Below are positions 15,175 to 33,100 of a stretch of DNA of 64,000 nt, piece by piece. Both the position numbers and the translations under genes were made by a program. Each line of letters begins with the position of its first letter. Position 1 is the stretch's first letter. The notes below the pieces were generated by a model that was given only the letters and a program-made list of their open reading frames with translations, did not search any database and was not told the DNA's origin. This DNA is from Macrostomum hystrix. Its lineage: Eukaryota > Animalia > Platyhelminthes. The stretch is from the NCBI GenBank assembly GCA_950097015.1, contig CATNEN010000038.1, positions 33,790,001 through 33,854,000 on the forward strand, given 5' to 3'.

Positions 15175-18100
15175 TTAAGGCGTGTCCAACAACATGCAGG
15201 GAGTCACGTGACCAGCCGGCAAACTTTCCAGCCAATCAGATCGAGCCGGCAGGATTAGCAGGCCGGAGGCGGCCTGGCAGGAGAGCAGGCGACTGCTCAA
15301 CTGATTGCCGGTGCTCCATGCTACTGGCAAGTCGCCGCTGGTGTCACCGCCGCGAACGCCAGCTGTCCATTGCAGATTGCAGCGATGATATTCCGGCCGA
15401 GCATCCAATTTGATTTCCTGACCAAGCTGTGAAAAAAACATAAAATTTAGAAAAGGCAAAATATCCAATAATTTATAAAAAGTAGAAGCGAACCTTGACG
15501 CTAATTATAGCCCGGTTAGGCTCAGGCCAGCCAGCTAGCTTCCTGCAGGCCGGAACGACGTATAAATTTGCGGTGACGAATGCGCTAACAGGATTGCCAG
15601 GCAGGCCGAAGAATAGGGTTCGACGATCGCCGACAGACAGGGTGGCAAATGAAGTTGGCTTGCTGCGGGCCGAATTTAGTAGTTAAATGATTTCTTAGAA
15701 AGGTTTTTTAGAAATGAGAGACAAATGACCTTACAACATGCGTTGCAATGTAAATAAGTATATATACATTATAACCCTGATTAGCGAGATGTAAAGCAAA
15801 TAGCACAACCCCAGCTAAAACTCGACTTACCCTGGCTTCATGAGAACCTGAGCAAAATGAAGCGTGGCGTTAAAGTCTGTGGTTAGAACCTGCTTGACGA
15901 GATCCTAGAATAATTTTAGCAATTATTAATAAGATACTTAATAATGTACTTTGCGCCATAAAAAATGACCAAATTTTAGTATAACTTACCCTCTCGCCCA
16001 TAGAAACTCCGCCTGTTGTGACAACAACGTGGCACGCTTTGATGGCCTTTTCGAATGCGTTGACAAGGCAGTCGGCTCTGTAAAGTCAGTGGTCATGTAA
16101 GCAAGTGGCTAGCGAGTAAAATAGTAATTCAGCACTTACTTATCAGGAATGATGCCAAGATCAATCACAGGGAAGCCCTGGGAGGCCAACAGTGCCAAGA
16201 GGGTGGTTCGATTGCTGTCGCGAATTTTAGCTCCGTTGACACTGTCTTGGAAGGGCTCCATTAGCTGAAGGTATGAACCGAAACGACAGTAGCATTTTTA
16301 GATGTAGTTCGATCAAGGTGTTAATACAGTGGATTATTATTTTTTGTAGTGGATTTGGGTGCTCCAGTAGTCGATTAAGGTGTTTTTGGTATATTAAGGT
16401 GCTTCTTTTGTTTATTTGGGTGCTCCTGCAGTGAATTAATGTATTTCTGCAGTGAGTTAATGAGTTTCTGTATCTGATTTAGACGTTTCTGTATTTGGTT
16501 AAAGTTTTTTAGTGTAATAAATTCTGTAGTGTATTAATGAGTTTTTGTAGTTATTAATTGCATTTTTGTAGTAGATTAATGTATTTTTAAGTGGATTAAG
16601 GTACTTCTGTAGTGGATTTAGCATCCGACCAAAAAACTGACGAACAGAACGATATCAAAAGCGCACCTCGTTGCCTGTGGAAGCCACGCCAACCACTGGC
16701 AGCTGGTGCAAAGCCACCTGCGAGCAACCGATGGAGGCCAGAATGCCCAGCTCGCAGGGCCCGATGCGGGCGCCACTGTCAAGCACTTTAGCTCCAAAAG
16801 CAATGTCCGAGCCCACTGGCCGAATGTCCTGACCCTCCTTGGCCGGCTTCAGTACTTCAATAACTAGCTCCCGAGTAAGATCCGGGCTAGACTCAATCAG
16901 TGCGGTGTCCTCAACCTGAACCACGGCATCTGAGCCGCTTGGCACGGGGCCCCCGGTGCTGACCCTGATAGCGCAGTGGGATTGAAGTACAACAGACGCC
17001 TGAAACAAGAGGTGGGATCTTGTCTTACGAGTGTGGGATTATAGGCTGATGAAGTTACCTAATAATCTGTCAGCTTTAACTATTACAGCGCTAAGCCCGC
17101 TCACCTCATCACCAGCGGTGACAGCGTCAACAACGCGCCTGCGTCCGACTCCGTCGCAAGCTCGCACAGCGTAGCCGTCTTTAATTGAGGCGCGAAAAGG
17201 CGGCAATAGCTCTTTGGCAATCACATCCGCGGCTAGAATGCGACCCATTGCGCTAGTAGCTGTGCTAACATTCTCAGCTGGCAGTGGAGCAGCCTCATTA
17301 AGTACTTTAGCTACAGCCTCATCAACGCTGATTAACGGATAAGGCGATTGACGTGGCCGACTAGCGATGTGAGCCTCGTTGACAAGACTTTTAGTAAGGG
17401 CCTGCTGCAGCTGCTGATGAGACGAAGACGAAGAGGAGTGCTGGTGGTGATAATGATGCGCGTGACCGTGGTGATGAGCCTGCTGATCCGCTTCGTGGTG
17501 ATGATGCTGACGGTGCTTAGCTGCGGAATCATCCATGGAGTGTGTTGGTGCTTGGCGGAGTGAGGTGAATGTTTAAATTTAGTGGGCTAGGTGAATTAAA
17601 TTAGGAGGAGTGAGGTATATTTTTCCTGGAGTAAGGCGGGTGATTTTAGAGTGAGGTGGGTTTCTGAAGTAGCGAAGAAGTTGTTGCTGTTCGTTACAGC
17701 AACTGTTCTCACCTTGACCCGGATTCTGCATTTCGACATGCTCCGCTTTAACTTCAACAATTCGACCTTGCAGTTGTTTCACAGCGTGCAACAGTATCGG
17801 CTCCATCACAGCGAAGCATTCGCCAACCGCCTTCTGGCTGCCCGGCAGGTTGACGATGAGTGTGGAGCCGCGAATGCCAGAAATGCCACGAGACAACATA
17901 GCATACGGTGTAGCCTCCAGAGACTTCATCAGCACCGCAGTGGCCATGCCATCGGCGCGCTTATCCAGCACTCTGGCGGTTGCCTGTAACATCGCATGGC
18001 ATAGAGCACACATAGCTGTCAATTAACTAGGTCAAAAATATTCAGCTGGCAACAGCAACCCTTCTTATCTTAAAAAAATTTAACTGCATAGTAAATTTAC

Positions 18101-21100
18101 CTCAGGAGTGACATCGCGAGGTGTGAAGCCAGTGCCTCCAGTTGTAAAAATGATGTCACATTTGGTATCATCAGCAAAACTCCTCAATTGCTCCTTATAT
18201 GAACATGTATAAAGTGCTATAGTTAAGTTTACCATAACTCTTGAAATCTAAGACTAAAAGACAAAGACAAACATCACAAAATTAATTACCTCAATCATAA
18301 CAGACTCATCAGGAACAATAACAGTGAAAATACTGTCCTTATTTGCATGAAAACTGTGACTGTAATTATTTTTATGAAGAGAGAATAGAAAAAAATTTGC
18401 AATAACCTCTGAAAAACGAAACAAACACTATTAAAATTAATGGAGCCTTACCTATTACACAGCAATTTAAGCAGGTGTGGCCCACTTTTGTCAGCATGAG
18501 GACTATTGTAAGCAGTATCACTCACTGAAATGCAAGCAATTGAAGCAAGTTAATGTAACTACAAATAAGTTAATTAAAAAAATTTTTATATAAATCGTTC
18601 CTATGTGTGCCAATCTTGCCACTTCTTTGCCCACCAAGGATCAGGTTTTAGGATGTAATTTTGAAGACAAAAAGAAGTGCTGCAGACAACCTCAGTTTGC
18701 CAATGGCCCATCTCCCCATCTTCCGCAAAATATTATTTTAGTCCTATTTTAAAGTCATTTTTTACTATAAGTATCTTATGATTGTGCTGCTTTTAAAGCA
18801 ATTCCCAGATGCAAATTTAGATTTCAAGGCGCATCCAAGTTTACAAAAAATAGTTGCCAACATTTTCAAACTACAGATTTTTACTCCAATAACCCTATAT
18901 CCCTAGTTGTGCCTCTTCACAGTCTAATTGACAGCTATGTGTGTTCTTATTCCCTCTTCACCACTTCTGTGCACTGCACATATGCCACACTACAGTTTTC
19001 TCTTGTCTCACTCTGTTTTTTCACTGCACACAGTCACAGCAGCTTGTGCCACTTGTCCGAATACACACCTCTGATTTGTCCATTGCCAGTTAAAGTGCTT
19101 TCTAAAACATTCAGATAGTAGCTATCTTTGATACAATTACATTGTTTTGTTTTGCTCAAGTGCTTTCTACAACATTCAGATACTAGCTAACTCTGAAACA
19201 ATTACATTCTGCTGAAAACTAATCAAATTTTTCTTACTATTTAAACAACCCTAATTGGTTAACTGAGCCATGGGATAGATTAGCAAACCATTCTATTCAC
19301 TCTGCCTACCTTTGCCTATGTAAATTTCAACACTTTGCAACAATATAGTTTGCAATCAATCAATAAAACTACAATTAATTTTGCACACTGAGAGAATTCA
19401 TTTACATATTTCTATATCTTAGCTTAGCCCATACTCCCGAAGATGCTGTTTTTTGGGGAAAATTCTCGCGTGCAACAGGGTCTTGGGCAGTGATGGGCCG
19501 CGTGCACGGCGTGCAGCCGAGAGGCAGCAAATTTTTTTGGCGTGCGCTGCGCATAAAATTTTCCCGTGCAATGGTTTTGGTGTAAACTTTTAGAAGTTTA
19601 AACGGAATGTCTCACGATAACAAAACAATGTACTTAGTAATATTTTTGTATGTATAATAAAATAAAAAAGTTTTTTATGCTGTACAAACTTATAAAGCAT
19701 TTTAACTTATAATAAATACAAAACGTATAGTATTTTGTTTAACTGTTTTATTTTTCGCTTTCATTTGAAAGTGTGTCTTGTGTTCCTCTTTAATTCCTCC
19801 CACCACCACTGTTCACGTCCACCCTCTGTATTTTTCAGTTTTTGACGATTGACGCATGTTTAATACAAATATGGACAAATATGGACATGGTTCCGATTTT
19901 ATAGTTGTGTCGGAGTCGGATCACTCGGATGTAGATGCCGATGGTAATGGTTCAGGCTCCGAGTCCGACTCAGAGCAGGAGCAGGAGCAGGCGGAGCAGC
20001 CAGAGGCAGAGCCAGCTCTCGCAGCAGCAGCAGTCACACAGACACTCACACTCACTAGAGATAGAGACTCAACAGTGCCAAAGCAGATGCAGATGCAGGC
20101 GCAGCCACTAGGCCCACCACCAAGTCATCAAAATGGTAAGAAGGCACTGATCTATTCTATTATTCTATACAATAAAGTAAACTAATTATAATACTAATAC
20201 TTATACAATACATAACAATATAGTAAATACTAATTAATCTATTTTCTATATGATTTTCTAGTTTTTTATTCATATTTGAGAATTGTGATTTTGCTATTTT
20301 GCTATTTGCTATTTTGCTATTTTGCAAATATATGCTATATAGGCCCCTATGCTTTGTTATTTTGCTATTTTGCTATTTTGCTTTGCTATTTTTGCTATTT
20401 AGTATTAGTACTTAGTATTAGTATTAGTATTTGCTATTAGTATAGCTCCGCTCCCGTTTCCTGGAGCGGAGGTCTGTCGAGTTCCGGGTGGAGGACTACC
20501 CTACCCTGAAGGCCAGCATCGACAGCCTCCGTCCTGGTGGCAGCTATGCTGGTGTGCCGCTTCTGCAGGGCTGGCTCGTCGAGTCCCAGCCCCAGCGATC
20601 CGAGGAGAAGACGGTCCACTGGGTCGCTCGCGACATGGACGACGTGCAGGTCAGTCATAGGTCGTAGCATAGTTAAGTAGGATTAGTAGCGCAGAACTAG
20701 TTAATTTCAGGCTTATTGAACCCCTATGACCCAATACCACAGGAGGAGATTGTAGGCTTTGTACGAGCCCTGCACGCGAGCTTCGTGGCGCGCATGAAAA
20801 AAGGCACCCGCGCCGGCATCGGCATGGTGAAGCGCACTCCCACTGTTGCCATGGACGCAGCTGCTGCCGTGGAGCTTCTGGCACCGGAGGACGTTCTCCT
20901 GGCTGTGGAGGAATATACCGTGTCGCCCGAGGTTCAGCTCCTTGTGAAGCAGGCGTCAAGGTTTCCGCACCTGGAGCTGGCTGCCGGCCTCTCGCGCAGG
21001 TTCCTGGAGAAGTACGTGCGCGCAATTCACGAGGTCGTGCAGTCTGGGACCGGCCGGGATGACTGGCTGTCACCACCAGTCAATTGCGCCATTGTCGCCG

Positions 21101-24100
21101 TTAATGTTGTCGAAAGACCCGAGTCGAGCTGCGACCTTGGTCTGCACCTTAAGGTGAAGACGCAGTCCGGCAGCCACGTGGTGACGAGGCTCAACGAGGC
21201 AGCCGTGTACGCCTCAGCGTACAGCGACCCACGCTTTTACGGCGCCATCGGCCGCGAGGGATGTCGGCTCCTCGACTTCTCGCTCCATCGGGGTGGCAGC
21301 GGTATGTCAAATAGGTGTCTCTATCTTCTAGTGCTCGGTGCTCCCAAAGCTGCTTAGCAAATGGAATCTGTTTTTGGTTTGATGCTATGCCCTGTCCACA
21401 TTTTCCTCACAATCGCCCCCCCGGCCCCACCTCATTCTACAGAGGCGGTGGTGGAGTCTTTTTACTCCACAATGCGCTCCCTTCAGAGGCGGACGAAGCT
21501 GCGGTGGATGCTGCCACCGGTTGCCAGCAAAGACTGCGAACGCCTGCTTAAGAAGGCCGCCCGTTTATACTTTGACGGAGACACAGCACGTGGCGTCAAT
21601 CCCCACCGTGGTCCCTTCTTCAAGGACATCCGGGCTACCACGTACGACGTCAGCAAGGTGGTCGACAGAAGATCTTCTATGCACTCCCGCTGTCCATTCG
21701 TCGGCCGCTCAGAGGAGGTGGAAGTCGACAACGACAAGGAGGACGAGGACGTGTCTGACCGCCCCGCCCCTTATTAAGCGACCGTGACGTGGTTCATAAA
21801 AAGTGACTTGTGACGCAGTCATTTTTCTTAAATTTCGGAACGGCGTCATTTTTTTTTTGAAGAAAAAGTTGAGTATGCGTTTTTATCACGGAAAATTATA
21901 AATTTGAAAGCTTTTTGAGAGGCGCATCTTTCCATTGAAGGGTTTAGGTTGAAAATGCTTTGGCCTGGAGATATAGGGGTTTGAAAAAATGACGACACGG
22001 CCAAATTGTGACAGATATAAAGAAAAATGACGCGAAACGTAAAAATGACGACGTGACGCAGACGCAAAATTAAACAAAATAGTTTCTAATTCTTTCAACA
22101 TGCGCCGAAGAGATGTTGATATTTAAATGAACTTTGCATGTTTCTGCATTCTACTTGTGCATTTGTCTAAATCATGCTTAATAGTTGCATATGACTATCA
22201 AATCCAAAAGATTTCAAATTTGGTCCGACACTTTTTCACCCGATCAAGACGATCGGTACCTCTGGTGTTCTCTCTGTTCTGTCTGTGCAGTTTGTAATTA
22301 ACCCTGCGTGCTTTTTATTGCTTCGATGTCGTCGATTCTTTGTATTGAGTTTGCTGCGCATCGTGTTTTTGCTTTTCATCATAACTGGTACAATTAATTA
22401 CTATAATAGTGTGCCACTATATTTTCACTTACACTTGTCTTAAGTTATTTATTATTGTCTATTACCAAAAAAGTCGGGGAGAAAGCTGGATATTGTATTT
22501 TGTCTATACTAATCTGACAGGCAGCTAGTTTCAACCAAAGAGTATTGAGGTCGCCTAGTATAGAGTGCCAATAATGACGAAAATCTGAAGCCGATTTGTA
22601 GAATTTGTAGATTTGTAGATTTGTAGACCCACCCCCTCCGGTCACCAAGCTTTTTAGTCTATGGCACAAGTTGTGGCTAGAATGGTGCATTAAGCATACA
22701 TGGTATTCGTCCAGCTACATTAGCTACTTGTATTTTTCTATGTATACTCGTATTTCTGAGCTTTGGCTTTGTATTGGCTTTGTACACCATTCTAGCCACA
22801 ACTTGTGCCATAGACTAAAAAGCTTGGTGACCGGAGGGGGTGGGTGGATTCTAAAAATCGGCTTCAGATTTTCGTCCTTATTGGCACTCTATACTAGGCG
22901 ACCTCAATACTCTTTGGTTTCAACTTTCATGCTAAGTAAAATATTGGCATATGTTCAATGCTTTAATTTAAATTTCGAAGAATGTTGTGTAGACTATACT
23001 ATAGTGCATATATACATAGCCTATAGAAAATACTATCTATTGGCAAGCAAAAGAGAATGTTTAGCCAGACTTTTATTATATTAAAATAAATATTTGTTCT
23101 TTATTATTTTATCTTGCTTGAAAATATTAATGATTGAAGCTTAGAAGCTAATTATGTTTATGAAGCCATTGAAGCTTTGCTCTTATATTTAGGTCTTTGG
23201 CCAAATTATTATAATTTATTTTGGATAGAAAAGTATTTTAGCTCTATTGCTATCTTCTAAATAGAGCTATAGAGCTCTAGACATTTGACAATGTCTATAT
23301 ATACTATAAACATTCATATTTGGATAGCATATATTATATGATAGCTTTGGTTTACATGAATAGTCTTTTATATGGGCTTTATATAAAACTGTTTATCTAT
23401 ATTGAGTATGCCATATGTATAGTCATATTCATTAAACTATTTTGAATTTAAATTTGCTCCAAAATCATTTAGTCTATTTGTACTACTATATGCCAATAAA
23501 ATATCAATCTAAATGCCTTATTATTAGAGGATTAAAAGGAAGACTAAGATGCATTGCCAACATAAAATATGGATATTAGAAAATAGTTTTTACCATATAA
23601 GATGCAAAAATAGACATAGTGAGATTTTAGTACAAATTTTAACTTGAAGTAGCTTAACAAATGGAACCATGCATATGCCTTGAGAATTTCCAATGATAAA
23701 ATTAGAGGATAATGGCTAATATAATATTTTCTATTTTTATCACTTTGTTTTATATCATTCTTTTTATATATATTATATATCATATTCATTATATTGCATT
23801 TAGAAAACTCATTAAAGAAAGCATATTCAAAATAAAAAGGATATCTTATAAATATTGGTGCCAATTTTAAACACTTTCTACAAAGCTAAGCTTATGGTAG
23901 AACAATGCCTCAACTATCATAAGACTTTTAAAAACTATCTTATTCTCAAAGCATTTGTAAATTGAAATTTCATGGAATTATTTGTTTATTATTATTTCAA
24001 ATAAGATTTATATGCCATTAACTAATTTATATTCTAAAATAATATTATTAATCAAACTAATTATAATGCTTTTTATATTGCCCAATTTGTATCTATGGCT

Positions 24101-27100
24101 ACTAATATTATCAAAAGGCCAAAGTAGGCTTAATAGAAAAGAAGAAACATTTATATTATCAGCTATGCACCCAGGGGTAGGGGGTGGGGACAGCCACCCC
24201 CCTTTAGGCCACTGAAGATTTTTTATAAAGGGAAGCTTCAATGCAGGGAGGAGGAGGCCCCTAGAATGAAAGTTAATTCTATTGAATTTAACAAACTGCC
24301 CCCTTATAAAATTTCTGGGTATGCCATTGTTTACTATATATATAATTTTATTAATATAAGTTGCTTCATATTACTTTTCTCTTTTGTCCTCAAGGCTCAA
24401 AATATACAATTTGAATCTTTTTCCTTTTATCTTGCTATTGTATCTATTTTATTGATATTGATAAGATGTTTTATAGATAAGTATCCAACAAGGAAGTTTT
24501 TTATTCAAGCCAAAAAATCTAATTTTGTGACTTTTTTTATTTATATCATCTTATATCCATTAACATAACAAATCTCTTTTGGAACATTGTCCAACAAATA
24601 TAGTTTGATATACTTAAATTCTTCATTCCAGACCAATTCAAAACAAAAATGATAAATGATGACATCAATTGTCATCAGGGTCGACCACCTGACAGTGACC
24701 TATTCTCTGAACCAATTCTTAATACTAATCAAATGTTAGCCTTATTAAGTCAGAATAATGATGATTTGCAATATATCTCTTCTAATGAGCTGTCTGACAA
24801 GTCTGCAGCTGGTTTTGCTCCTCAGCAGACGACACTAATGGATTCCTTGAACCAGCAGACCTCTTCCAATGAGCTGTCTGACAAGTCTGCAGCTGGTTTT
24901 GCTCCTCAGCAGACGACACTAATGGATTCCTTGAACCAGCAGACCTCTTCCAATGAGCTGTCTGACAAGTCTGCAGCTGGTTTTGCTCCTCAGCAGACGA
25001 CACTAATTGATTCCTTGAACCAGCAGACCTCTTCCAATGAGCTGTCTGACAAGTCTGCAGCTGGTTTTGCTCCTCAGCAGACGACACTAATTGATTCCTT
25101 GAACCAGCAGACCTCTTCCAATGAGCTGTCTGACAAGTCTGCAGCTGGTTTTGCTCCTCAGCGGACGACAAAAAGTGATTTGAATGCTGGTCATGAAGAT
25201 ATGCTCCTTGTGGTCATAGGCAAAACGCCAGATTGCCTCTTCCAACCAAGTGATCCATCATTGTCTGGCACTCTCATTACTGAGAAAACTGCTTCTAGTT
25301 TGCCTCACAGTGGTGATGGATTGCTGCATCATGAAGCATCTTGTACGAGTAGTACAGGTAGGAGAGCTGCAAAACGTGGCTGTCATGTACTATACAATGA
25401 GGAAGTTGACTGCGATTTAGATTTAGAGGATGATGACATACTTGCATATGAAGTGCCAGAAAGGACTTTAGTATCCACGGAGAATCTTTTGCCACAAGTG
25501 GAAAAAGTACAGTTTGTCCGTAGAGGTGTTGATTATGTCTGCTTTGTTGACGAGTCCCATCTAATCAAAGAATCTCGCATAGCTGAACATTTTCGAGGGC
25601 AACATCCAGCAGAGATGCAAAACTATGCATCCATTCAGGAAATTAAGGACCATTTGGTAAAATTCAACAAGGAAAAGTTTGGCGACATCCAAAATAAACC
25701 TGGTCGCCGTTGTACCACTGCCAATGAGTCAAAAGGTAAAAGAAGAGGTAAAGACTACATGTGCCACTTTGATGCTAGTCATGTGATTAAGAAATCTCGA
25801 TTTGCGGAGCATTTTCGGTACTTTCACCGCAACGAATTCAACTCGACGCCTATCAAAACTTTAATTGAAATGTCAAAGGCAGAAACTTTTAAGTCTGTAG
25901 ACATGGAGAACAAACTCGACCATGTGTGTCCTAAATGCAGTTTGCCAGTTTCTAGCTCCCTTCTAAGCCATTTGATTAACTGGCACAAATGTTCTATAGG
26001 AGAGGCAACAGCCACAATATTACATTTGAAGACGCAGAAAGTGCAGTCAATTGTTCGAGAGTCGTGGAATCGAGCCGACAAAGTAAGCCAATCAGATGCT
26101 ATAGATGCGGATGTATCAGCTCAAGTTAATGAAATTGAAACAGACGATGCCGATGATGAGATTATTGAACCATCATTGAACCACTTCGAATGTCATCTGC
26201 AGACTTATGGTGGAACAAAACTGGCTCTCTCTACTGCCCAACAAAGCCGTCGCGCGGTGGCTAGGATGATGGACGAACTTGGAGTATCGTCGCCTATCGA
26301 AATCATAGACGAAAAGCACCGCTCTACTATCACGGAATTTCTTACAAACAAGAGCGCAAACTTTTCTGATGGAACCAAAATCTATGTCGAAGGGCTGAAG
26401 CGGTTTGCAACCTATCTTAAAAGTTGCTTCAATTCTGTCATTGTAAAAAGAAAGAAGGGAGCTGAGCTAGACTCCTTTCTATTTGCTTGCAAACTCTATG
26501 GTCGATCCCGTCTGCAAGACAAAAAAGTTGCTGAAACGAAGCGCCGACACAAGCTTGACAAAAATTGTCTTACTAATGACGAAGTCAAAATTGTCGACAA
26601 AATAATCGATGAATTTTCTAAGGTAGCTAAACAGAAGCCAATTGATTCAGTCGAGAATGTTTTGTTTCTTGGCTTGAACTTCGTGTTTGGATTGGGAAAT
26701 TTCCACCGAGCAGATTCGGTATCAAATGCTAAGATTTCAGAGTTTTTGGCTTGGAAATCTGAAGTTTCAGTGGATCCAACAGCAATGTTTGAAGTTGAAA
26801 TGCACAAGACCGGCAAAAAGGGTTGTGTTATGGTTTCAGTCGAACATATTCGCAGAGCTTCTTTCATATGGCAACCACCGAGTTTCAGAAGGTGCCAAAG
26901 ACAGTGACTTCCTCTTTAATTTTAAGTTGCAGATAGCAAACCATTCCTTTTCCACATTTATGCGAAGATGCAAGTCTCAATTTCCAATTTTGAACGATTT
27001 CAATCGCGTAAATGTTCGCACATTTAGACACTTCTTTGCGACAAAGGGAAAAGAGCTTCTAAATGTAGAGGAGCAAGAGCTGCTGCACAAGAGGATGCAT

Positions 27101-30100
27101 CACAGCAGAGAAGTAGCTGAGCAAAGCTACATGGCAACAACTGTGTCATTGGCAAGAAAAGCCAAATCTGTAGCTCTTCAGCTGTTTGACGAAGTAGCTG
27201 CTCCAGCCTCACAATCCACTAGCAATGCGGAAAATGACATTGAGACTGTTGAGACTGAGCACTCAGACATTCAAGCTACCGAAGTGACTAGTCAAAGTGC
27301 ACAAAAAGCATCTGCATCTTCACCTTGCTCGAAGAAAAGAAGATATGGTACAGTTGCAAGCAAAAAGTCGAGTGTCGAGGCCAGCCTGAAAAAGGCAAAA
27401 AGTTCTACGCAGGCAACAACTGTGTCATTGGCAAGAAAAGCCAAATCTGTAGCTCTTCAGCTTTTTGACGAAGTAGCTGCTCCAGCCTCACAATCCACTA
27501 GCAATGCGGAAAATGACATTGAGACTGTTGAGACTGAGCACTCAGACATTCAAGCTACCGAAGTGACTAGTCAAAGTGCACAAAAAGCATCTGCATCTTC
27601 ACCTTGCTCGAAAAAAAGAAGATATGGTACTTCTGCAGTTGCAAGCAAAAAGTCGAGTGTCAACGAGGCCAGCCTGAAAAAGGCAAAAAGTTCTATGCAG
27701 CAGCACGAGAAGACACCTGCAACATCAAGTCAGCCACAGATCCAGTCTACAGGTTGTCAAGAGCCTGGTGACATTGTGTTCGCTAAATATCCTGGATATA
27801 CCTGGTGGCCTGCCATGGTTTGCAATGATGCTAAAACAAACCTCCACATATCGACTAAAACTTCACTGAAGACACGACGTGAGCGAATATTTGTCCAATT
27901 CTTTGAAAAGCCGCCAAAGAGCGCATGGATTAGTAGTACAAATATCGAGCCATTCAGTCTGGAGAAGGCCGGACAACTAGAAAGCACCAGCGATCGGGAT
28001 CTAGCTGATGGTATAAAGACAGCCTGTGACGCCGCAGGATTTGACCGACTGGATCGACTAAACCGATACCTGGTAAAGCCTAGCTGACAATGTCAAACTT
28101 TGTGGATTTGTGAATGGCGTCTAACATTATCTAATAACTGTCAAACATGTCTAACGTGCTTCCTAGAGTTTGGATTAGCTGTTGTGAAAAAAACGTGACG
28201 TAGTGCTTTATAAGGCGGGCTCAAAAATGACTGTTGCGAATTTGAGAAAAAGTGACGTAGTGCTTTTTAAAGCGGGCTCAAAAATGACTGCTGCGAATTT
28301 AAGAAAAAGTGACGTAGTGCTTTTTAAATCGGGCCTCAAAAATGACTGCTGCGAATTTGAGAAAAAGTGACGTAGTGCTTTTTAGATGGGTTCTCAAGAA
28401 TGCCGTAGTGCTTTTTAAGGCTATGTTTAGGGCTATGGCTATTTTCTCTAGAAGTTCAGAGTGGAGCATCATAGACTCTGTTAGACATTGATTGCTGCAA
28501 CTTTCTAAAACTGGGTCAGTTTGCAAGTGCCAATCCGGTCTGCTCAATTGATCATTTTTGCTAATGACGCGTATGATGCTTTAACTTTTGTCGTCCATTG
28601 CATTGTGCGAGAGAAGCAGTGATTGAGTTTCCTTTTTAAGTCTTATCGTGCTAAAATGCCGTTTTCTATCACCTACATTTTTTCATTTGCGTCCCTTCCA
28701 AAGTTCCACGTGGTTGAATTTTCTGTGTCCCACTTCCACCTGCAAAAAAATATATTGCACTGTTCGGGGGGGTAAAAAATGACTGTTGCGAATTTACGAA
28801 AAAGTGACGTAGTGCTTTTTAAATTGGGCCTCAAAAATGACTGTTGCGAATTTAATAAGGCGGGCTCAAAAATGACTGTTGCGAATTTGAAAAAAAGTGA
28901 CGTAGTGCTTTATAAGGCGGGCTCAAAAATGACTGTTGCGAATTTGCGAAAAAGTGACGTAGTGCTTTTTAAAGCGGGCTCAAAAATGACTGCTGCAAAT
29001 TTAAGAAAAAGTGACGTAGTGCTTTTTAAATCGGGCCTCAAAAATGACTGCTGCGAATTTAAGAAAAAGTGACGTAGTGCTTTTTAAATCGGGCCTCAAA
29101 AATGACTGCACTGCGAATTTAAGAAAAAGTGACGTAGTGCTTTTTAGATGGGTTCTCAAGAATGCCGTAGTGCTTTTTAAGGCTATGTTTAGGGCTATGG
29201 CTATTTTCTCTAGAAGTTCAGAGTGGAGCATCATAGACTCTGTTAGACATTGATTGCTGCAACTTTCTAAAACTGGGTCAGTTTGCAAGTGCCAATCTGG
29301 TCTGCTCAATTGATCATTTTTGCTAATGACGCGTATGATGCTTTAACTTTTGTTGTCCATTGCATTGTGCGAGAGAAGCAGTGATCGAGTTTCCTTTTTA
29401 AGTCTTATCGTGCTAAAATGCCTTTTTCAATCACCTACATTTTTTCATTTGCATCCATATGGATCAATTTGGTACATTTCCACCTACAACAAATATATTG
29501 TACTTTTGTGCTCGCGGGTTTCAAAACTAGCTGTTGATAAAATTACGTGAGTGCTATTTAAATGGTTCCGAAAATGACTGCATTCATTTTTATTCCTAAT
29601 GCTGGATGGCTGGCTTGGCTTAGTGGATGGCTTAGAACTTGGTAAAAAAGCATTGAGACGTGAACAGTTGAAGATTTTTTATTCCTAAGATTCATCTTCC
29701 TAATGAACAAAATTCTGCCATTTGCAAAAGCTAATATTACACTGGTAACATTGCAGCAATCACCATTTATTTTTTATTTTGTGGTGAGTGTTGCAATTTG
29801 CAAACTATAAACTGTATGATAAAATTTGTCTAAATAATGACTTCAGAGGACAAATATGACGGCTAATGATCATTTCAGCTGCGTCACACCTTTAAATTTT
29901 GCGTCACAGCCCAAACTTTGCCGATTCTCATAGGAAAACAGTGCGTCACACTATCCGTCACTTTTTTCACGCTGCGTCATGTCATTTTTGCGTAATCCGT
30001 CATCACTGAACCCCCAAGGACTGAACTTTGACAAATGACTCCCAGATTCTCAATCAAATCGGCACTGAGTTCGTGACTTATAAAACAGGTTTAGCATAGC

Positions 30101-33100
30101 TAGAAAAAATAGCGCAGCACATTTATTTAGGATAAAAGCGTAAAAACGTGTTCATACATCGGACGCTGGAAGTTGGAACCTTCCCCCCCCGTCATTCAGC
30201 TTAGCATGCGGCGTGCATTGGTGGTTGACCTCCCGCGTATGGCGTGCAAGGGCAAAAACAGTTCTCGCGTGCACGGAGCATACTCGGGACTATGGGGCTT
30301 AGCCAGCCCATTCATTACCATAGTTTGAACCATATAGACAAATCCTTAAACTGCATTCAACTTTGCCAAAACTGCAATCAAGTTTTCCTGAAACAAAATA
30401 ATTGAAGAACAAATCATCTAAAACTAACACGGAATGAGATGACACAGCACAATGAATTTGAAGAGTTTTAAAAGTTCATTGATTATACATTTGAGTATGA
30501 TTAACCTACTTAATGCATTTCTGTTGGGTGATGAGACTCATTTAGACATCTACCTCACACTTGAGCATTGACAAACAATGCTGATGCGATTTGGCCCAGC
30601 ATTGTCAGTTGAAGTACCACATGTTGTATATGAATATTTTATAACGGTAAATACTTAAAATTAAGCATTGATTGCAGATAACCCGTGTTAATATGCGTGT
30701 GAAATTCTCAGGTGCTTCGGCCTCCTCACGAAAGCATTGTTGGCACTGTAGCTGATGGCCAATATCAAATTCGGACAAAATGTCTGTCATGTGGGATGCT
30801 GCATATTTTCTCAATTTAGCCGTCACAGACGTCCGTGATGGACCTGAGGGAGAAGCGCTGCGCCGTTTCATTAAACGTGCAAATCACTTCGGGAGTCTTT
30901 TCAGCCGGGGTCGCGGGCACGCAGCACTGCAAGCAGCGTCAGATGGCTCAGCTCGGGCAATGTCTCATTTCGCTTCCCAGCGATTTACGAGCTCTGCAGT
31001 CAAGTGAGTACTTACGACTATTTTTTATCAGTACTTTTATGTATGCTCATTAGATGTCACAACATTTTAGAAATTTGCTTATGAAGCACCGCAATGAAGC
31101 TGAGTATGTATCCATGTCTTTTGTATTTCTCAGGCAGTGGACTGCTATCGAACAGTGTTTCTCCGCACTGCACACAGCATTTCGCGAGGAGAACCCTTGC
31201 TGTTTGGACGATGAGGAGCTGCAGTACGCCATGTTTGGTAGCGACTTTGTTTTCGATCTCCTGTGCCTGCAGGACCTCATGGCCCCCTTGGTCTCCCTCA
31301 TGGATATTGCTCAGGACCTCCAGCTGCCGCACTGGAAGGTATCTGTTCTGGCAGGCAAGGTTGCAAAGCACCTGGCAGATCGCGCTGATGTTTTCCGTGT
31401 TGAAGATTACCCACCGCTGCAGGTAGTATTTCCATGAATCTAAACTACCATTGAGTTTTTCTCAATTCTCAATATTGAAATAGGATTACATACAGCAATG
31501 CGTGCTATATTTCAGGGAATGTACATTACCCGCACTAAATTATTTTTCCTTCATGTTACTCTGCTTAAGGCCTGCTACAATTCTATCCAGCCTGGAGGCA
31601 TATTCAAATCTGTCAAGCTACTTGGTGGCTGGCTTGTTCAGCCAAACATGCCCGCGGCAAGCTCCCGAAGCAACCTACGAGCTGGCAAACCCAGCAGCAA
31701 AGTCAACTGGCATCTTCGAGAAGCCCAGGATATGGAGCAGGTAGAGATGATCAAGTTGCAAAGAGTTGTATATTTAGGAGTTTAAACAGCCTTTAGCAAA
31801 TGTCTAGATCATGATACACTTACTCGAAAAAAAGACATTAATTAATCACATATGTCTCACACTAACAGGACTTGGTCCAGCTGGCTTCAGCCCTTCACCA
31901 CTCATTCCTTGCATGACTGGCGAAGTGCTGCAAAAACGGATGCATCCATTGTGATGGACGCTGCTCTGGCCGTGAGCCTCCTGACTGCCGAGGACGACGA
32001 TGAAGCAGTCGAGAAAGCCACCCAAACACCAGAGGTGAAACAGCTAGTGCAGCTGGCCACCAAGCATCAGCAATTGGCACCACATTTTAAGCAGTCGTTG
32101 TCGCGCAAATATTTGCAGTCTTTTGTATCAACCATCCATGAGGCAGTTCTAACTGGTGAAGGCCACGAAGACTGGTTTGAACCTGCCATTCAGGGCCGCA
32201 TCATTAAGGTCGCCAAAGTAGTTCCTGTTAAATCAGGTGACTTGGTACTGCTGCTGCAGTTGACATTGGAGTCCGGCGAATCGGTCAGTGCTAAACTGAA
32301 TGAGCAGGCAGTCTACCCATCCTCCTACAGCGATCCCAACGTGCTTCCGGACCTGCTGCTGCTAGTTCGTCCAGTCATAAAACTGTGGCTGAAAGACGCT
32401 ATCAAGAAGAGCAATGTAGGTCGAAAGAATTGGAAGCTGCTTTTCTTGGTGATGAACAGTCTTGCCATGGTGCATGGTCAACAGCTGGCAATCTAGAAGC
32501 ATCCTCGATGTCATTAACACCGCAGCGACATGGACGTCTTAATCTTGGCTTTAGAACAATCAACGAAAATACGGAAGATCATTCCAGGATAAAAAATCGG
32601 GCTTCTGAAGGCCGATCCGATTGGTAGTGCTGCTTCTGGAAGTTCTGGTCCATCAACAACTCAGCTTTTGCTGCTCGAGCTTCGACTACAAATGAACCTT
32701 CAGTGTCAGGCTTTAAAGAAGCTGGAGGACCAGAATTCATTACTTAAAGAATTCCTAACACCACCTGATGATCAAGTCCTCGAGGACCAGGTCACCGGGA
32801 ATGTTTGAATCTTCGATTCCGCTATGTGTCATGGTCAGCAGTTCGCTACTCTTTGAACCAGATGTTAGACAACAAAAACAAGAAGCAGTGGACCGACAAG
32901 GATCACGATGATGAACAGAATTTGTAAGTTTATTTTTATTACTTTAAAACTGTATCGTTTGGTAAAATCACTTCATTTGCAAAATACAGTAGTGGCTTGA
33001 TATATGCGCATGTTAGACTGTATGAGCGGGTTTTAGAAGGATTTTTCCCTCTCACAGTAATGACTCTGATCAGTCTGTTTTCAAGTCGCATTAGATTTAG

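What the first reader, a model, noticed from the sequence alone, without database searches (positions are those of the whole stretch)
19428..30296. Giant TIR transposon whose DDE transposase has decayed but which carries a ZnF-tyrosine recombinase-PWWP gene
Seen: TIRs and a TSD delimit 10.9 kb containing a core-deleted hAT-like transposase and a nearly intact ~1140-aa ORF with zinc fingers, R-K-(H)xxR-H-Y recombinase residues and a C-terminal PWWP domain. Known: tyrosine-recombinase DNA transposons (Cryptons) lack TIRs and TSDs, and PWWP domains read H3K36me2/3, a gene-body mark. Inference: this is either a composite hAT+YR element or a Crypton-like element nested right after the hAT stop codon. 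In both cases the PWWP could target the recombinase to transcribed gene bodies, which fits its location in a gephyrin intron. I do not recognise this domain combination as a described family.
Basis: partly seen in the sequence, partly recalled or inferred. Interest (0 to 1): 0.85.

Follow-up and report, generated by a model that had tools for sequence, protein, structure and literature searches.

The report
Recombinase-PWWP transposon nested in hAT-like transposon
The 10.9-kb "giant transposon" is two jumping genes, one inside the other: an 8.2-kb, now frameshifted, cut-and-rejoin (tyrosine recombinase) element whose enzyme carries a PWWP histone-mark-reader domain sits inside a decayed 2.6-kb inverted-repeat transposon, and the reader domain's role in choosing landing sites is untested.

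Summary
An inverted-repeat (TIR) transposon with an 8-bp target duplication spans 19429-30295. It contains a remnant transposase-like gene and a ~1150-codon gene with zinc fingers, a tyrosine recombinase (YR) and a PWWP domain, broken by one frameshift.

It is a nested pair, not one composite element. The other copies of the TIR family examined (about six places; four read end to end, 0.58-1.63 kb) lack the recombinase. The recombinase belongs to a separate multi-copy family in this genome. At least four subfamilies have intact 1124-1531-codon frames, and some copies are >99% identical. These elements have their own ends, no TIRs and no target duplication.

Five copies from two other subfamilies share one end geometry: left CCCC-N14-TGACG, right CGTCA-N8-CCC(C). 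Each pattern occurs exactly once in the 64-kb window, at 21767 and 29998. This bounds an 8.2-kb Crypton-like element inserted at a C-run two codons before the carrier gene's inferred stop.

An AlphaFold model of an intact paralog matches only tyrosine recombinases and type IB topoisomerases at the top of two structure searches (Z 10-11). The PWWP is closest to NSD2 and MSH6 PWWPs. Pfam's Crypton-derived DUF3504 model does not detect the recombinase. The hAT label for the carrier is plausible but unproven. Chromatin-guided targeting is inference.

This scan had already reported the same family at other places in this genome.

The parts
19421..19428 (.). Left copy of the 8-bp target-site duplication of the carrier (AGCTTAGC)
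   Evidence: The right copy GGCTTAGC matches 7 of 8. Four other family copies have perfect 8-bp duplications.
19429..21766 (+). Left part of the carrier TIR transposon (hAT-like, unproven). Left TIR begins at 19429 with CCATACTCCCG.
   Evidence: Other genomic copies begin at query base 1-2. The ends were read in L058-L061. The internal part 21300-21770 is unique in the genome.
19853..20182 (+). Acidic N-terminal open frame of the carrier, followed by simple repeats (20288-20443)
   Evidence: No Pfam hit.
20446..21774 (+). Remnant of the carrier's transposase-like gene, in three open stretches of one frame (20446-20664, 20701-21354, 21358-21774) separated by in-frame stops. Its N-terminal ~300 residues are missing relative to a paralog.
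   Evidence: for the frames. tblastn against the 635-aa paralog of L054 aligns residues 297-549 and the C-terminal piece only. Genomic paralogs are 32-45% identical. No Pfam or PDB sequence hit. Atlas leads point to FAM200/GTF2IRD2/DUF4371/Dimer_Tnp_hAT at scores below 0.9.
21767..30015 (+). Nested Crypton-like tyrosine-recombinase element, about 8.2 kb. CCCC at both ends is the crossover microhomology. No TIR and no target duplication.
   Evidence: End patterns taken from five copies of two other subfamilies match once each in the window, exactly here. CGTCAY / GTCATTTT motifs cluster in its subterminal regions.
21767..21789 (+). Left terminal site, CCCC-N14-TGACG
   Evidence: Only match in 64 kb on either strand, 0.14 expected. 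The same pattern sits at the left ends in L048, L050, L052, L062 and L064.
21784..22060 (+). Left subterminal cluster of CGTCAY / GTCATTTT-type motifs (12 hits), candidate protein-binding sites
   Evidence: The window background is 0.58 per 500 bp.
22527..22925 (.). Foldback MITE nested inside the recombinase element's 5' region, a third layer of nesting
   Evidence: Inverted arms of 78 and 69 nt at 95-96%. Matches at about 20 other places in the genome.
24649..26907 (+). Recombinase gene, first frame (752 aa): repeat-rich N-terminus, three zinc fingers, core-binding domain and first half of the catalytic domain (R at 26701-26721, K at 26800-26820)
24777..25170 (+). 84-bp coding tandem repeat, 4.7 copies
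   Evidence: One DNA-run contig skips 336 bp here.
25534..25986 (+). Three zinc fingers: two CHHC-like (25534-25605 and 25756-25827) and one CxxC...HxxxxH (25927-25986)
26170..27142 (+). Tyrosine recombinase region (core-binding plus catalytic domain), interrupted by the frame switch at about 26849-26851. RHFF at 27020-27046, H at 27095-27115, Y at 27119-27142.
   Evidence: Family alignment. AlphaFold model of the paralog and fold searches. DNA contigs cross the frame switch unchanged.
26687..28087 (+). Recombinase gene, second frame (466 aa): rest of the catalytic domain, low-complexity linker, PWWP, stop
27134..27631 (+). Internal duplication of a 73-codon stretch (27134-27352 and 27413-27631) just after the catalytic tyrosine
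   Evidence: Raised contig depth at 27000-27399.
27767..28033 (+). PWWP domain. The Y, W and F that align with the NSD2 PWWP1 cage are kept.
   Evidence: Pfam 57.9 bits. Closest solved relatives are NSD2 PWWP1 and MSH6 PWWP, E 8e-12 to 7e-11.
28185..29146 (+). Two arrays of a 57-bp tandem repeat (28185-28384 and 28856-29146). Each unit carries GTGACG and AAAAATGAC motifs.
   Evidence: Other subfamilies have comparable arrays whose copy number varies between copies.
29998..30015 (+). Right terminal site, CGTCA-N8-CCCC(C)
   Evidence: Only match in 64 kb, 0.20 expected. A one-C-shorter form of the pattern sits at the right ends in L049, L051, L053, L063 and L065.
30016..30295 (+). Right part of the carrier transposon, including the right TIR (ends ...CGGGACTATGG at 30295)
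   Evidence: Other copies end at query base 286-287..
30296..30303 (.). Right copy of the 8-bp target-site duplication (GGCTTAGC)

Best explanation
Three layers of transposon insertion lie just upstream of a gephyrin-like gene.

(1) Carrier (shown). A cut-and-paste TIR transposon of about 2.6 kb inserted here and made an 8-bp target duplication. Its superfamily is probably hAT, but this is not shown. Its transposase-like gene has lost its N-terminal ~300 codons.

(2) Recombinase element (shown). An 8.2-kb element of a Crypton-like family then integrated into a run of C two codons before the carrier gene's inferred stop. It encodes one protein: variable repeats, two CHHC-like fingers and one further zinc finger, a two-domain tyrosine recombinase, a low-complexity linker and a C-terminal PWWP.

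(3) Foldback MITE (shown). It later landed in the recombinase element's 5' region.

Mechanism (inferred). The element excises as a circle. The circle junction would then read CGTCA-N8-CCCC-N14-TGACG, two inverted recombinase-binding half-sites around the crossover. The recombinase exchanges strands between that site and a short chromosomal C-run. This leaves CCC(C) at both ends and no target duplication.

Accessory parts (inferred). The subterminal CGTCAY motifs and tandem arrays are accessory binding sites for the recombinase or its zinc fingers. The PWWP, which resembles H3K36me2/3-reading PWWPs, tethers the recombinase or the circle to marked nucleosomes and so biases where integration happens.

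State of this copy. It carries a frameshift inside the catalytic domain and is the only copy of its subfamily, so it is probably immobile on its own. Sister subfamilies have copies >99% identical and look recently active.
For: Carrier ends and 8-bp duplications.

Carrier copies without the recombinase.

Recombinase family:
- 29 and 22 protein matches in the genome, with open frames up to 1531 aa.
- All four subfamilies tested carry PWWP.
- Shared architecture.

Own boundaries with unrelated flanks:
- Three copies of one subfamily, 7.85-8.4 kb, >99% identical.
- Two copies of another, 9.65-10.0 kb. One of these sits in a satellite whose uninterrupted unit shows that only CCC is shared.

Conserved end geometry in five copies, and single matches in the window at 21767 and 29998.

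Motif clustering: 44 of the window's 74 motif hits lie in the element's two subterminal regions. The other subfamily shows the same clustering.

Recombinase fold:
- Model pLDDT 88.
- Foldseek top 10 are all Xer, Cre or IntI.
- VIA-align Z 10-11. In the search of 48,161 representative chains, the top 30 are tyrosine recombinases, type IB topoisomerases, related integrase domains or Ndc10.
- Catalytic R, K, R, H and Y are conserved wherever covered.

No reverse transcriptase or second gene.

PWWP.

Frameshift seen unchanged in DNA contigs of two runs.

Short terminal direct repeats as the Crypton hallmark: PMC3212892 and PMC13465315.
Against: - No circle junction, excision footprint or empty allele of this locus was observed. 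The reads tool allowed one 6-kb stretch, which cannot hold both ends.
- The recombinase is not detected by Pfam DUF3504 or Phage_integrase. A profile comparison with this genome's own DUF3504 elements gave probability 0.2%. Kinship with described Cryptons is therefore architectural, not shown by sequence.
- The fold-search Z values (10-11) are below the tool's caution line for helical proteins. The argument rests on the purity of the top ranks and the catalytic residues.
- No histone binding and no insertion-site statistics are available. Four of the six mapped insertion sites lie in or beside other repeats: two in satellite-like repeats, one in the carrier's ORF and one beside a gag-like ORF recognised only by eye.
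- Transcription is not shown. RNA-library contigs also cover a non-coding part.
Confidence: 0.85

Rival explanations
1. The whole 10.9 kb is one composite element, a DDE-type TIR transposon that captured a recombinase gene and moves as a unit by its TIRs. MarCry-1_FO in Fusarium is a precedent of this kind.
For: TIRs and a target duplication do flank the whole. A composite Mariner+Crypton element is on record (PMC3212892). A transposase acting in trans could in principle still move the 10.9-kb unit.
Against: The recombinase gene is single-copy at DNA level. All other copies of the TIR family that were read are 0.58-1.63 kb without it. The recombinase part carries the family's own terminal sites at both ends and interrupts the carrier's ORF.
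Confidence: 0.05
2. The zinc finger-recombinase-PWWP gene is a host (domesticated) gene passively captured or sitting here, not a transposon gene.
For: Crypton recombinases have been domesticated repeatedly, for example ZMYM2-4, QRICH1 and KCTD1 (PMC3212892). Earlier notes of this scan describe multi-exon relatives elsewhere in the genome (not tested here).
Against: This copy is frameshifted. Sister copies are >99% identical at unlinked loci, with unrelated flanks and precise common ends. The catalytic residues are intact in the family.
Confidence: 0.03
3. The structure is the same (nested Crypton-like element), but the PWWP does not choose targets. It may tether the excised circle to chromosomes so that it is not lost at mitosis. 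It may simply add nucleosomal or AT-rich DNA affinity. It may recruit host repair or chromatin factors.
For: PWWP domains also bind DNA. Drosophila P75 PWWP prefers T-rich DNA according to the abstract of PMC11910589 as listed (the paper itself was not read). The element's ends are rich in T-runs next to the CGTCA motifs. Four of the six mapped insertions lie in or beside other repeats rather than clearly in host gene bodies.
Against: The domain is closest to H3K36me-reading PWWPs, and the aligned cage residues are kept in all subfamilies. Nothing here discriminates between the two roles.
Confidence: 0.3

Closest known systems
Crypton DNA transposons (Goodwin et al. 2003; Kojima & Jurka 2011, PMC3212892)
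   Same: - One tyrosine-recombinase gene and no reverse transcriptase.
- No TIRs or LTRs.
- Short direct repeats (here CCC or CCCC) at both ends that reflect microhomology with the target.
- Low copy number.
- Lineage-specific accessory domains.
   Different: - The recombinase is not recognised by Pfam DUF3504 (CryptonA-derived) or Phage_integrase.
- It shows no profile similarity to this genome's own abundant DUF3504 elements.
- Animal Cryptons were described as having no C-terminal domain and no terminal repeats. This family has CHHC-type fingers, a C-terminal PWWP, long subterminal motif arrays and a conserved end geometry.
MarCry-1_FO (Mariner + Crypton composite in Fusarium oxysporum, PMC3212892)
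   Same: A DDE-type TIR transposon and a Crypton are found physically together.
   Different: MarCry copies share both parts and move as a unit. Here the association is a one-off nested insertion.
Chromatin-reader tethering of integration: LEDGF/p75 PWWP with lentiviral integrase, and chromodomain integrases of Ty3/gypsy chromoviruses (established knowledge; PMC4176367 was listed but not read)
   Same: A histone-mark reader is coupled to a DNA-integrating enzyme, which would bias integration towards marked chromatin.
   Different: In lentiviruses the PWWP belongs to a host cofactor. Here the PWWP is fused to a tyrosine recombinase of a DNA transposon, and its function is untested.
hAT superfamily transposons and their MITE-like derivatives (for the carrier)
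   Same: 8-bp target duplications, short TIRs, short internally deleted copies, and weak language-model leads to FAM200/GTF2IRD2/DUF4371/hAT dimerisation families.
   Different: No profile hit (Pfam) or sequence hit (PDB) to any hAT domain. The structure prediction of the Macrostomum homolog failed (pLDDT 45.5). The TIR does not start with the usual hAT end motif (from memory).

Membership tests
Crypton (tyrosine-recombinase DNA transposon) | Encodes a tyrosine recombinase with the catalytic R-K-(H/K)xxR-H/W-Y set | tested here: met
   Model pLDDT 88. Top structural matches are all tyrosine recombinases or type IB topoisomerases, Z 10-11. R, K, R, H and Y are conserved in 13-16 of 19 sequences, and nearly all the others are gaps from fragments. 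All five are present in the window copy across its two frames.
Crypton (tyrosine-recombinase DNA transposon) | No reverse transcriptase and no LTR or split repeats (distinguishes it from DIRS, Ngaro, PAT and VIPER) | tested here: met
   The recombinase gene is the only long ORF in the 8-10-kb elements. The other open frames are tandem-repeat or antisense artefacts.
Crypton (tyrosine-recombinase DNA transposon) | No TIRs or target duplication; short (4-6 bp) direct repeats at both termini matching the target | tested here: met
   CCC(C) sits at both ends in five copies of two subfamilies and in the window copy. A satellite insertion shows that only CCC is shared with the target.
Crypton (tyrosine-recombinase DNA transposon) | Recombinase sequence groups with a described Crypton lineage (CryptonA/DUF3504, F, S, I) | tested here: not met
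   No DUF3504 hit in any family member. None of the 150 listed genomic DUF3504 matches lies at this family's loci. hhalign against local DUF3504 elements gives probability 0.2%. CryptonF, S and I could not be tested because no Repbase sequences were available. According to PMC13465315, Cryptons are not one monophyletic lineage.
Crypton (tyrosine-recombinase DNA transposon) | Transposes through an excised circular intermediate | not testable with these tools
   One reads call of 6 kb cannot span both ends of an 8.2-kb element. No junction data were obtained.
hAT superfamily (carrier element) | 8-bp target-site duplication and short TIRs | tested here: met
   Four copies have perfect 8-bp duplications and the window copy has 7 of 8. 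The 20-bp alignment of the TIRs matches at 17/20.
hAT superfamily (carrier element) | DDE RNase-H-like transposase with a C-terminal hAT dimerisation domain | tested here: inconclusive
   No Pfam or PDB sequence hit for the window pieces, the 635-aa paralog or the 763-aa Macrostomum homolog. The AlphaFold model was unusable, pLDDT 45.5. The only support is Atlas leads below 0.9.
PWWP domain (PF00855), H3K36me-reader type | Matches the Pfam model above its gathering score | tested here: met
   57.9 bits against 25.6 in the window. 44.7-63.9 bits in four paralog subfamilies.
PWWP domain (PF00855), H3K36me-reader type | Aromatic cage residues present | tested here: met
   The alignment to NSD2 PWWP1 places the window's Y (GYTWWP), W (WWP) and F (VQFF) opposite NSD2 Y233, W236 and the FF of VQFF. 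The identity of the NSD2 cage residues is from memory. The same positions are kept in all paralogs.
PWWP domain (PF00855), H3K36me-reader type | Binds H3K36me2/3 nucleosomes | not testable with these tools
   This needs peptide or nucleosome binding assays.
Composite DDE+YR transposon (MarCry type) | Several copies share the TIR ends and the recombinase gene together | tested here: not met
   The recombinase gene and the carrier's internal region are each unique in the genome, and the other TIR copies lack them.

The most novel reading that the evidence does not exclude
A previously undescribed lineage of animal tyrosine-recombinase DNA transposons, seen so far in this genome and in Macrostomum lignano, carries its own PWWP histone-mark reader. 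This would be a transposon-encoded counterpart of the LEDGF/p75-lentivirus arrangement. Young, near-identical copies would be available for direct testing.
Probability: 0.3. Interest if true: 0.75.

Novelty: new variant of a known kind. Interest (0 to 1): 0.55.

Why it matters
Very little is known about how Crypton-type transposons find their targets or what their recombination sites look like.

This locus, together with its sister copies, gives three concrete things.
- A conserved terminal geometry (CGTCA-N8-CCCC-N14-TGACG once circularised), which is a testable candidate recombination site.
- A natural insertion whose pre-insertion sequence can be inferred.
- A recombinase physically fused to a PWWP of the H3K36me-reader type.

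If the PWWP guides integration, this would be a self-contained, chromatin-directed site-specific recombinase. That would bear on transposon-host biology and might serve as a compact targeting module.

For this particular locus the practical lesson is more ordinary: an apparent giant composite transposon resolves into nested insertions.

Tried and rejected
- **Sequence searches for an integrase domain.** Pfam on the window pieces, four paralogs and ten outside homologs found none. phmmer against PDB found only noise. The fold search was needed.
- **Outside relatives.** An exhaustive HMMER search of 1.84 billion representatives gave only 14 hits: Macrostomum lignano and unnamed short contigs, none with a PWWP. 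The word-index search added only low-complexity SIMC1 hits.
- **Carrier identity.** Pfam, the PDB sequence search, the ESM Atlas and an AlphaFold model of the 763-aa Macrostomum homolog were tried. The model had pLDDT 45.5 and was not searched further.
- **TIR-like symmetry of the recombinase element.** The long-range inverted matches (21818-21853 with 29098-29133, and others, 70-78%) are only shared short motifs, not TIRs.
- **Expression.** Contigs from a wastewater metatranscriptome match at six places, including non-coding 23000-23091, so they cannot show transcription.
- **Flank reading frames at three sister insertions.** The sample is too small for any statement about gene-body preference.
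- **Technical.** One script call returned nothing and was repeated.
- **Frame handling.** No frame-corrected protein was built. The intact paralogs were used by reference, and the window's two frames were searched apart.

Full report
**What is at the coordinates.**
- The region 19429-30295 is bounded by imperfect TIRs, CCATACTCCCG... and ...CGGGACTATGG. The 20-bp local alignment of the two ends matches at 17/20.
- That alignment alone is not above shuffled controls: score 28 against mean 20.8 and maximum 39.
- The ends are validated instead by the rest of the family. About six further places in the genome begin at the first or second base of the left end and stop at the last bases of the right end.
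- Four copies read end to end (0.58-1.63 kb) each carry a perfect 8-bp target duplication.
- The window copy has AGCTTAGC on the left and GGCTTAGC on the right.

**The carrier's gene.**
- Between 19853 and 21774 lie an acidic open frame, simple repeats, and a transposase-like frame in three open stretches separated by in-frame stops.
- The genome holds paralogs at 32-45% identity.
- Against a 635-aa paralogous open frame (L054), the window copy keeps residues 297-549 and a C-terminal piece and has nothing for residues 1-296. "Core-deleted" is a fair description.
- "hAT" is not established. Pfam and the PDB sequence search find nothing in the window pieces, the paralog or its only outside homologs, two Macrostomum lignano proteins.
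- The ESM Atlas gives consistent but sub-threshold leads to FAM200/GTF2IRD2/DUF4371/hAT-dimerisation clusters.
- An AlphaFold model of the Macrostomum protein was unusable, pLDDT 45.5.
- The 8-bp duplications and short TIRs fit hAT, but they are not exclusive to it.

**The long gene.**
- Two overlapping frames, 24649-26907 and 26687-28087, together encode about 1150 residues. The frames switch at about 26849-26851, inside the catalytic domain.
- Contigs of two DNA runs cross that site with no difference. These runs may be the assembly's own source.
- The PWWP is solid: 57.9 bits against a cut-off of 25.6.
- Its closest solved relatives are NSD2 PWWP1 and the MSH6 PWWP, E 8e-12 to 7e-11. The alignment keeps the Y, W and F that form the NSD2 methyl-lysine cage. 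The identity of the cage residues is from memory.
- Two CHHC-like zinc fingers and a third finger precede the recombinase. The CHHC model passes its cut-off in a paralog, 26.9 against 21.1 bits.

**Is it a tyrosine recombinase?**
- Sequence profiles say nothing.
I used an intact paralog and a 19-sequence family alignment (A2).
- The AlphaFold model has mean pLDDT 88.
- The Foldseek top ten are all XerA, XerD, XerH, Cre or IntI.
- VIA-align gives Z 10-11 to Brujita integrase, XerA and XerH over about 250-270 residues, and to type IB topoisomerases over about 150-160 residues at rmsd 2.9-3.5 Å.
- In the Foldseek-independent search of 48,161 representative chains, the top 30 are all tyrosine recombinases, type IB topoisomerases, related integrase domains or Ndc10. 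Kojima and Jurka reported the central part of Ndc10/Cbf2 as similar to CryptonF recombinase domains.
- These Z values lie below the tool's caution line for helical proteins. The purity of the top ranks and the catalytic residues carry the argument.
- R (HRAD), K (HKT), R (RHFF), H and Y (QSY) are conserved wherever the sequences cover them. The H-to-Y spacing is nine residues, as in XerD (from memory).

**One element or two?**
- At DNA level the recombinase gene is unique in the 220-Mb assembly.
- At protein level it has 29 and 22 matches, with open frames of 1124 to 1531 aa.
- All four subfamilies tested share the finger-recombinase-PWWP architecture.
- I stitched about 10 kb around three copies of one subfamily. 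They are >99% identical over 7.85-8.4 kb, differ mainly in tandem-array length, and sit in unrelated flanks with sharp common ends.
- Two copies of another subfamily gave the same picture over 9.65-10.0 kb.
- None is inside the carrier's TIRs.
- The left ends read CCCC followed by 14 bases and TGACG. The right ends read CGTCA, 8 bases, then CCC(C).
- One copy lies in a satellite whose intact unit shows that only CCC is shared between the element's ends and the target. There is therefore no target duplication, only crossover microhomology.
- This is the Crypton hallmark (PMC3212892 and PMC13465315).

**Boundaries in the window.**
- The two end patterns were derived from the other subfamilies. 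Each matches exactly once in the 64-kb window on either strand, at 21767-21789 and 29998-30014. Chance expectation is 0.14 and 0.20.
- In the fetched loci they mark all five left ends and, in a one-C-shorter form, all five right ends.
- CGTCAY / GTCATTTT motifs are concentrated at 21784-22060 and 28000-30003. These regions hold 44 of the window's 74 hits. Two 57-bp arrays lie there. The sister elements show the same clustering.
- The recombinase element is therefore 21767-30015.
- It entered a C-run at the very end of the carrier's ORF. The stop codon at 21775-21777 belongs to the inserted element, and the inferred original frame ran two codons further.
- A foldback MITE with matches at about 20 other places later inserted at 22527-22925.

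**Mechanism (inferred).**
- A circularised element would carry CGTCA-N8-CCCC-N14-TGACG: two inverted half-sites around the crossover. The spacing is identical in three subfamilies whose DNA no longer aligns.
- This is a strong candidate for the recombination site.
- The subterminal motif arrays are candidate accessory sites.
- The PWWP could bias integration to H3K36me2/3 chromatin. Alternatively it could tether the circle, or simply add nucleosome or DNA affinity. Nothing here discriminates between these roles.
- Of the six mapped insertions, two lie in satellite-like repeats, one in the carrier transposon's ORF, one beside a gag-like ORF recognised only by eye, and one near an ankyrin-repeat exon.

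**Relation to known families.**
- By architecture this is a Crypton.
- By sequence it is not CryptonA. The genome has at least 150 DUF3504 matches, none at this family's loci. A profile comparison gives probability 0.2%, although the catalytic motifs align in register.
- Outside this genome, an exhaustive search found 14 relatives: Macrostomum lignano proteins and unnamed short contigs, none with a PWWP.
- No paper in the searchable library holds both "PWWP" and "Crypton". The four that hold "PWWP" and "tyrosine recombinase" are on other subjects, judging by the titles and abstracts of the three that were listed.
- The library is incomplete, so this is absence of evidence only.

**Context.**
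- Gephyrin-like exons (MoCF_biosynth, then MoeA_N) lie on the minus strand from 18540 down to 16655.
- The carrier sits about 0.9 kb upstream of the most 5' recognisable exon. Whether that is an intron is unknown.

**Earlier notes of this scan.**
- After my own family analysis I found that earlier notes of this scan already describe the same recombinase-PWWP family at other places in this genome. They agree with what I tested and are not independent evidence.

**Limits.**
- One script call gave no answer and was repeated.

Noticed in passing
window 30756-32493 (+): A second, older fragment of the same transposase-like gene family lies immediately right of the carrier's right TIR. It is about 44% identical over 136 aa to the carrier's gene and 29% identical to the 635-aa paralog over residues 191-529. 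It includes a DAAYFLNLAV stretch that resembles the hAT 'AHxLNL' block (from memory).
   Followed up: partly
window 22527-22925: A near-perfect foldback (arms of 78 and 69 nt at 95-96%) belongs to a MITE family with matches at about 20 other places in the genome. It is nested in the recombinase element's 5' region.
   Followed up: partly
window 24777-25170 and 27134-27631: The recombinase gene holds an 84-bp coding tandem repeat (4.7 copies) and a duplicated 73-codon stretch right after the catalytic tyrosine. Every subfamily has its own unrelated N-terminal repeat. One DNA-run contig skips 336 bp (four units) of the 84-bp array.
   Followed up: partly
G000 genome-wide: At least 150 matches to DUF3504 (CryptonA-type recombinase), many with open frames of 400-570 aa. 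This genome is unusually rich in tyrosine-recombinase elements of a second, classical lineage.
   Followed up: no
window 25343 and 25382; runs X4 and X9: A 6-base deletion allele at 25343 is shared by a run of organism B and a wastewater metatranscriptome run. X9 also has G>A at 25382. The animal or a close strain apparently occurs in wastewater samples.
   Followed up: no
window 16655-18540 (-): Gephyrin-like gene exons: G domain (MoCF_biosynth), then E domain (MoeA_N). They include a histidine- and glutamine-rich linker exon at 17039-17536.
   Followed up: partly
L062/L063 (G000:C38:33661702-33671709) and L064/L065 (G000:C25:4279809-4289459): Two roughly 10-kb sister elements are inserted in short tandem repeats. 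The C38 copy, only about 120 kb from this window, sits in a satellite with the unit ctggcccatattggcccacatat. This shows the uninterrupted target and the CCC microhomology.
   Followed up: yes
P0001, P0026, P0034, P0035: For both the recombinase family and the carrier's protein family, the only named relatives outside this genome are in the flatworm Macrostomum lignano (42-53% identity). This suggests a macrostomid-like host or transposon lineages shared with that group.
   Followed up: no
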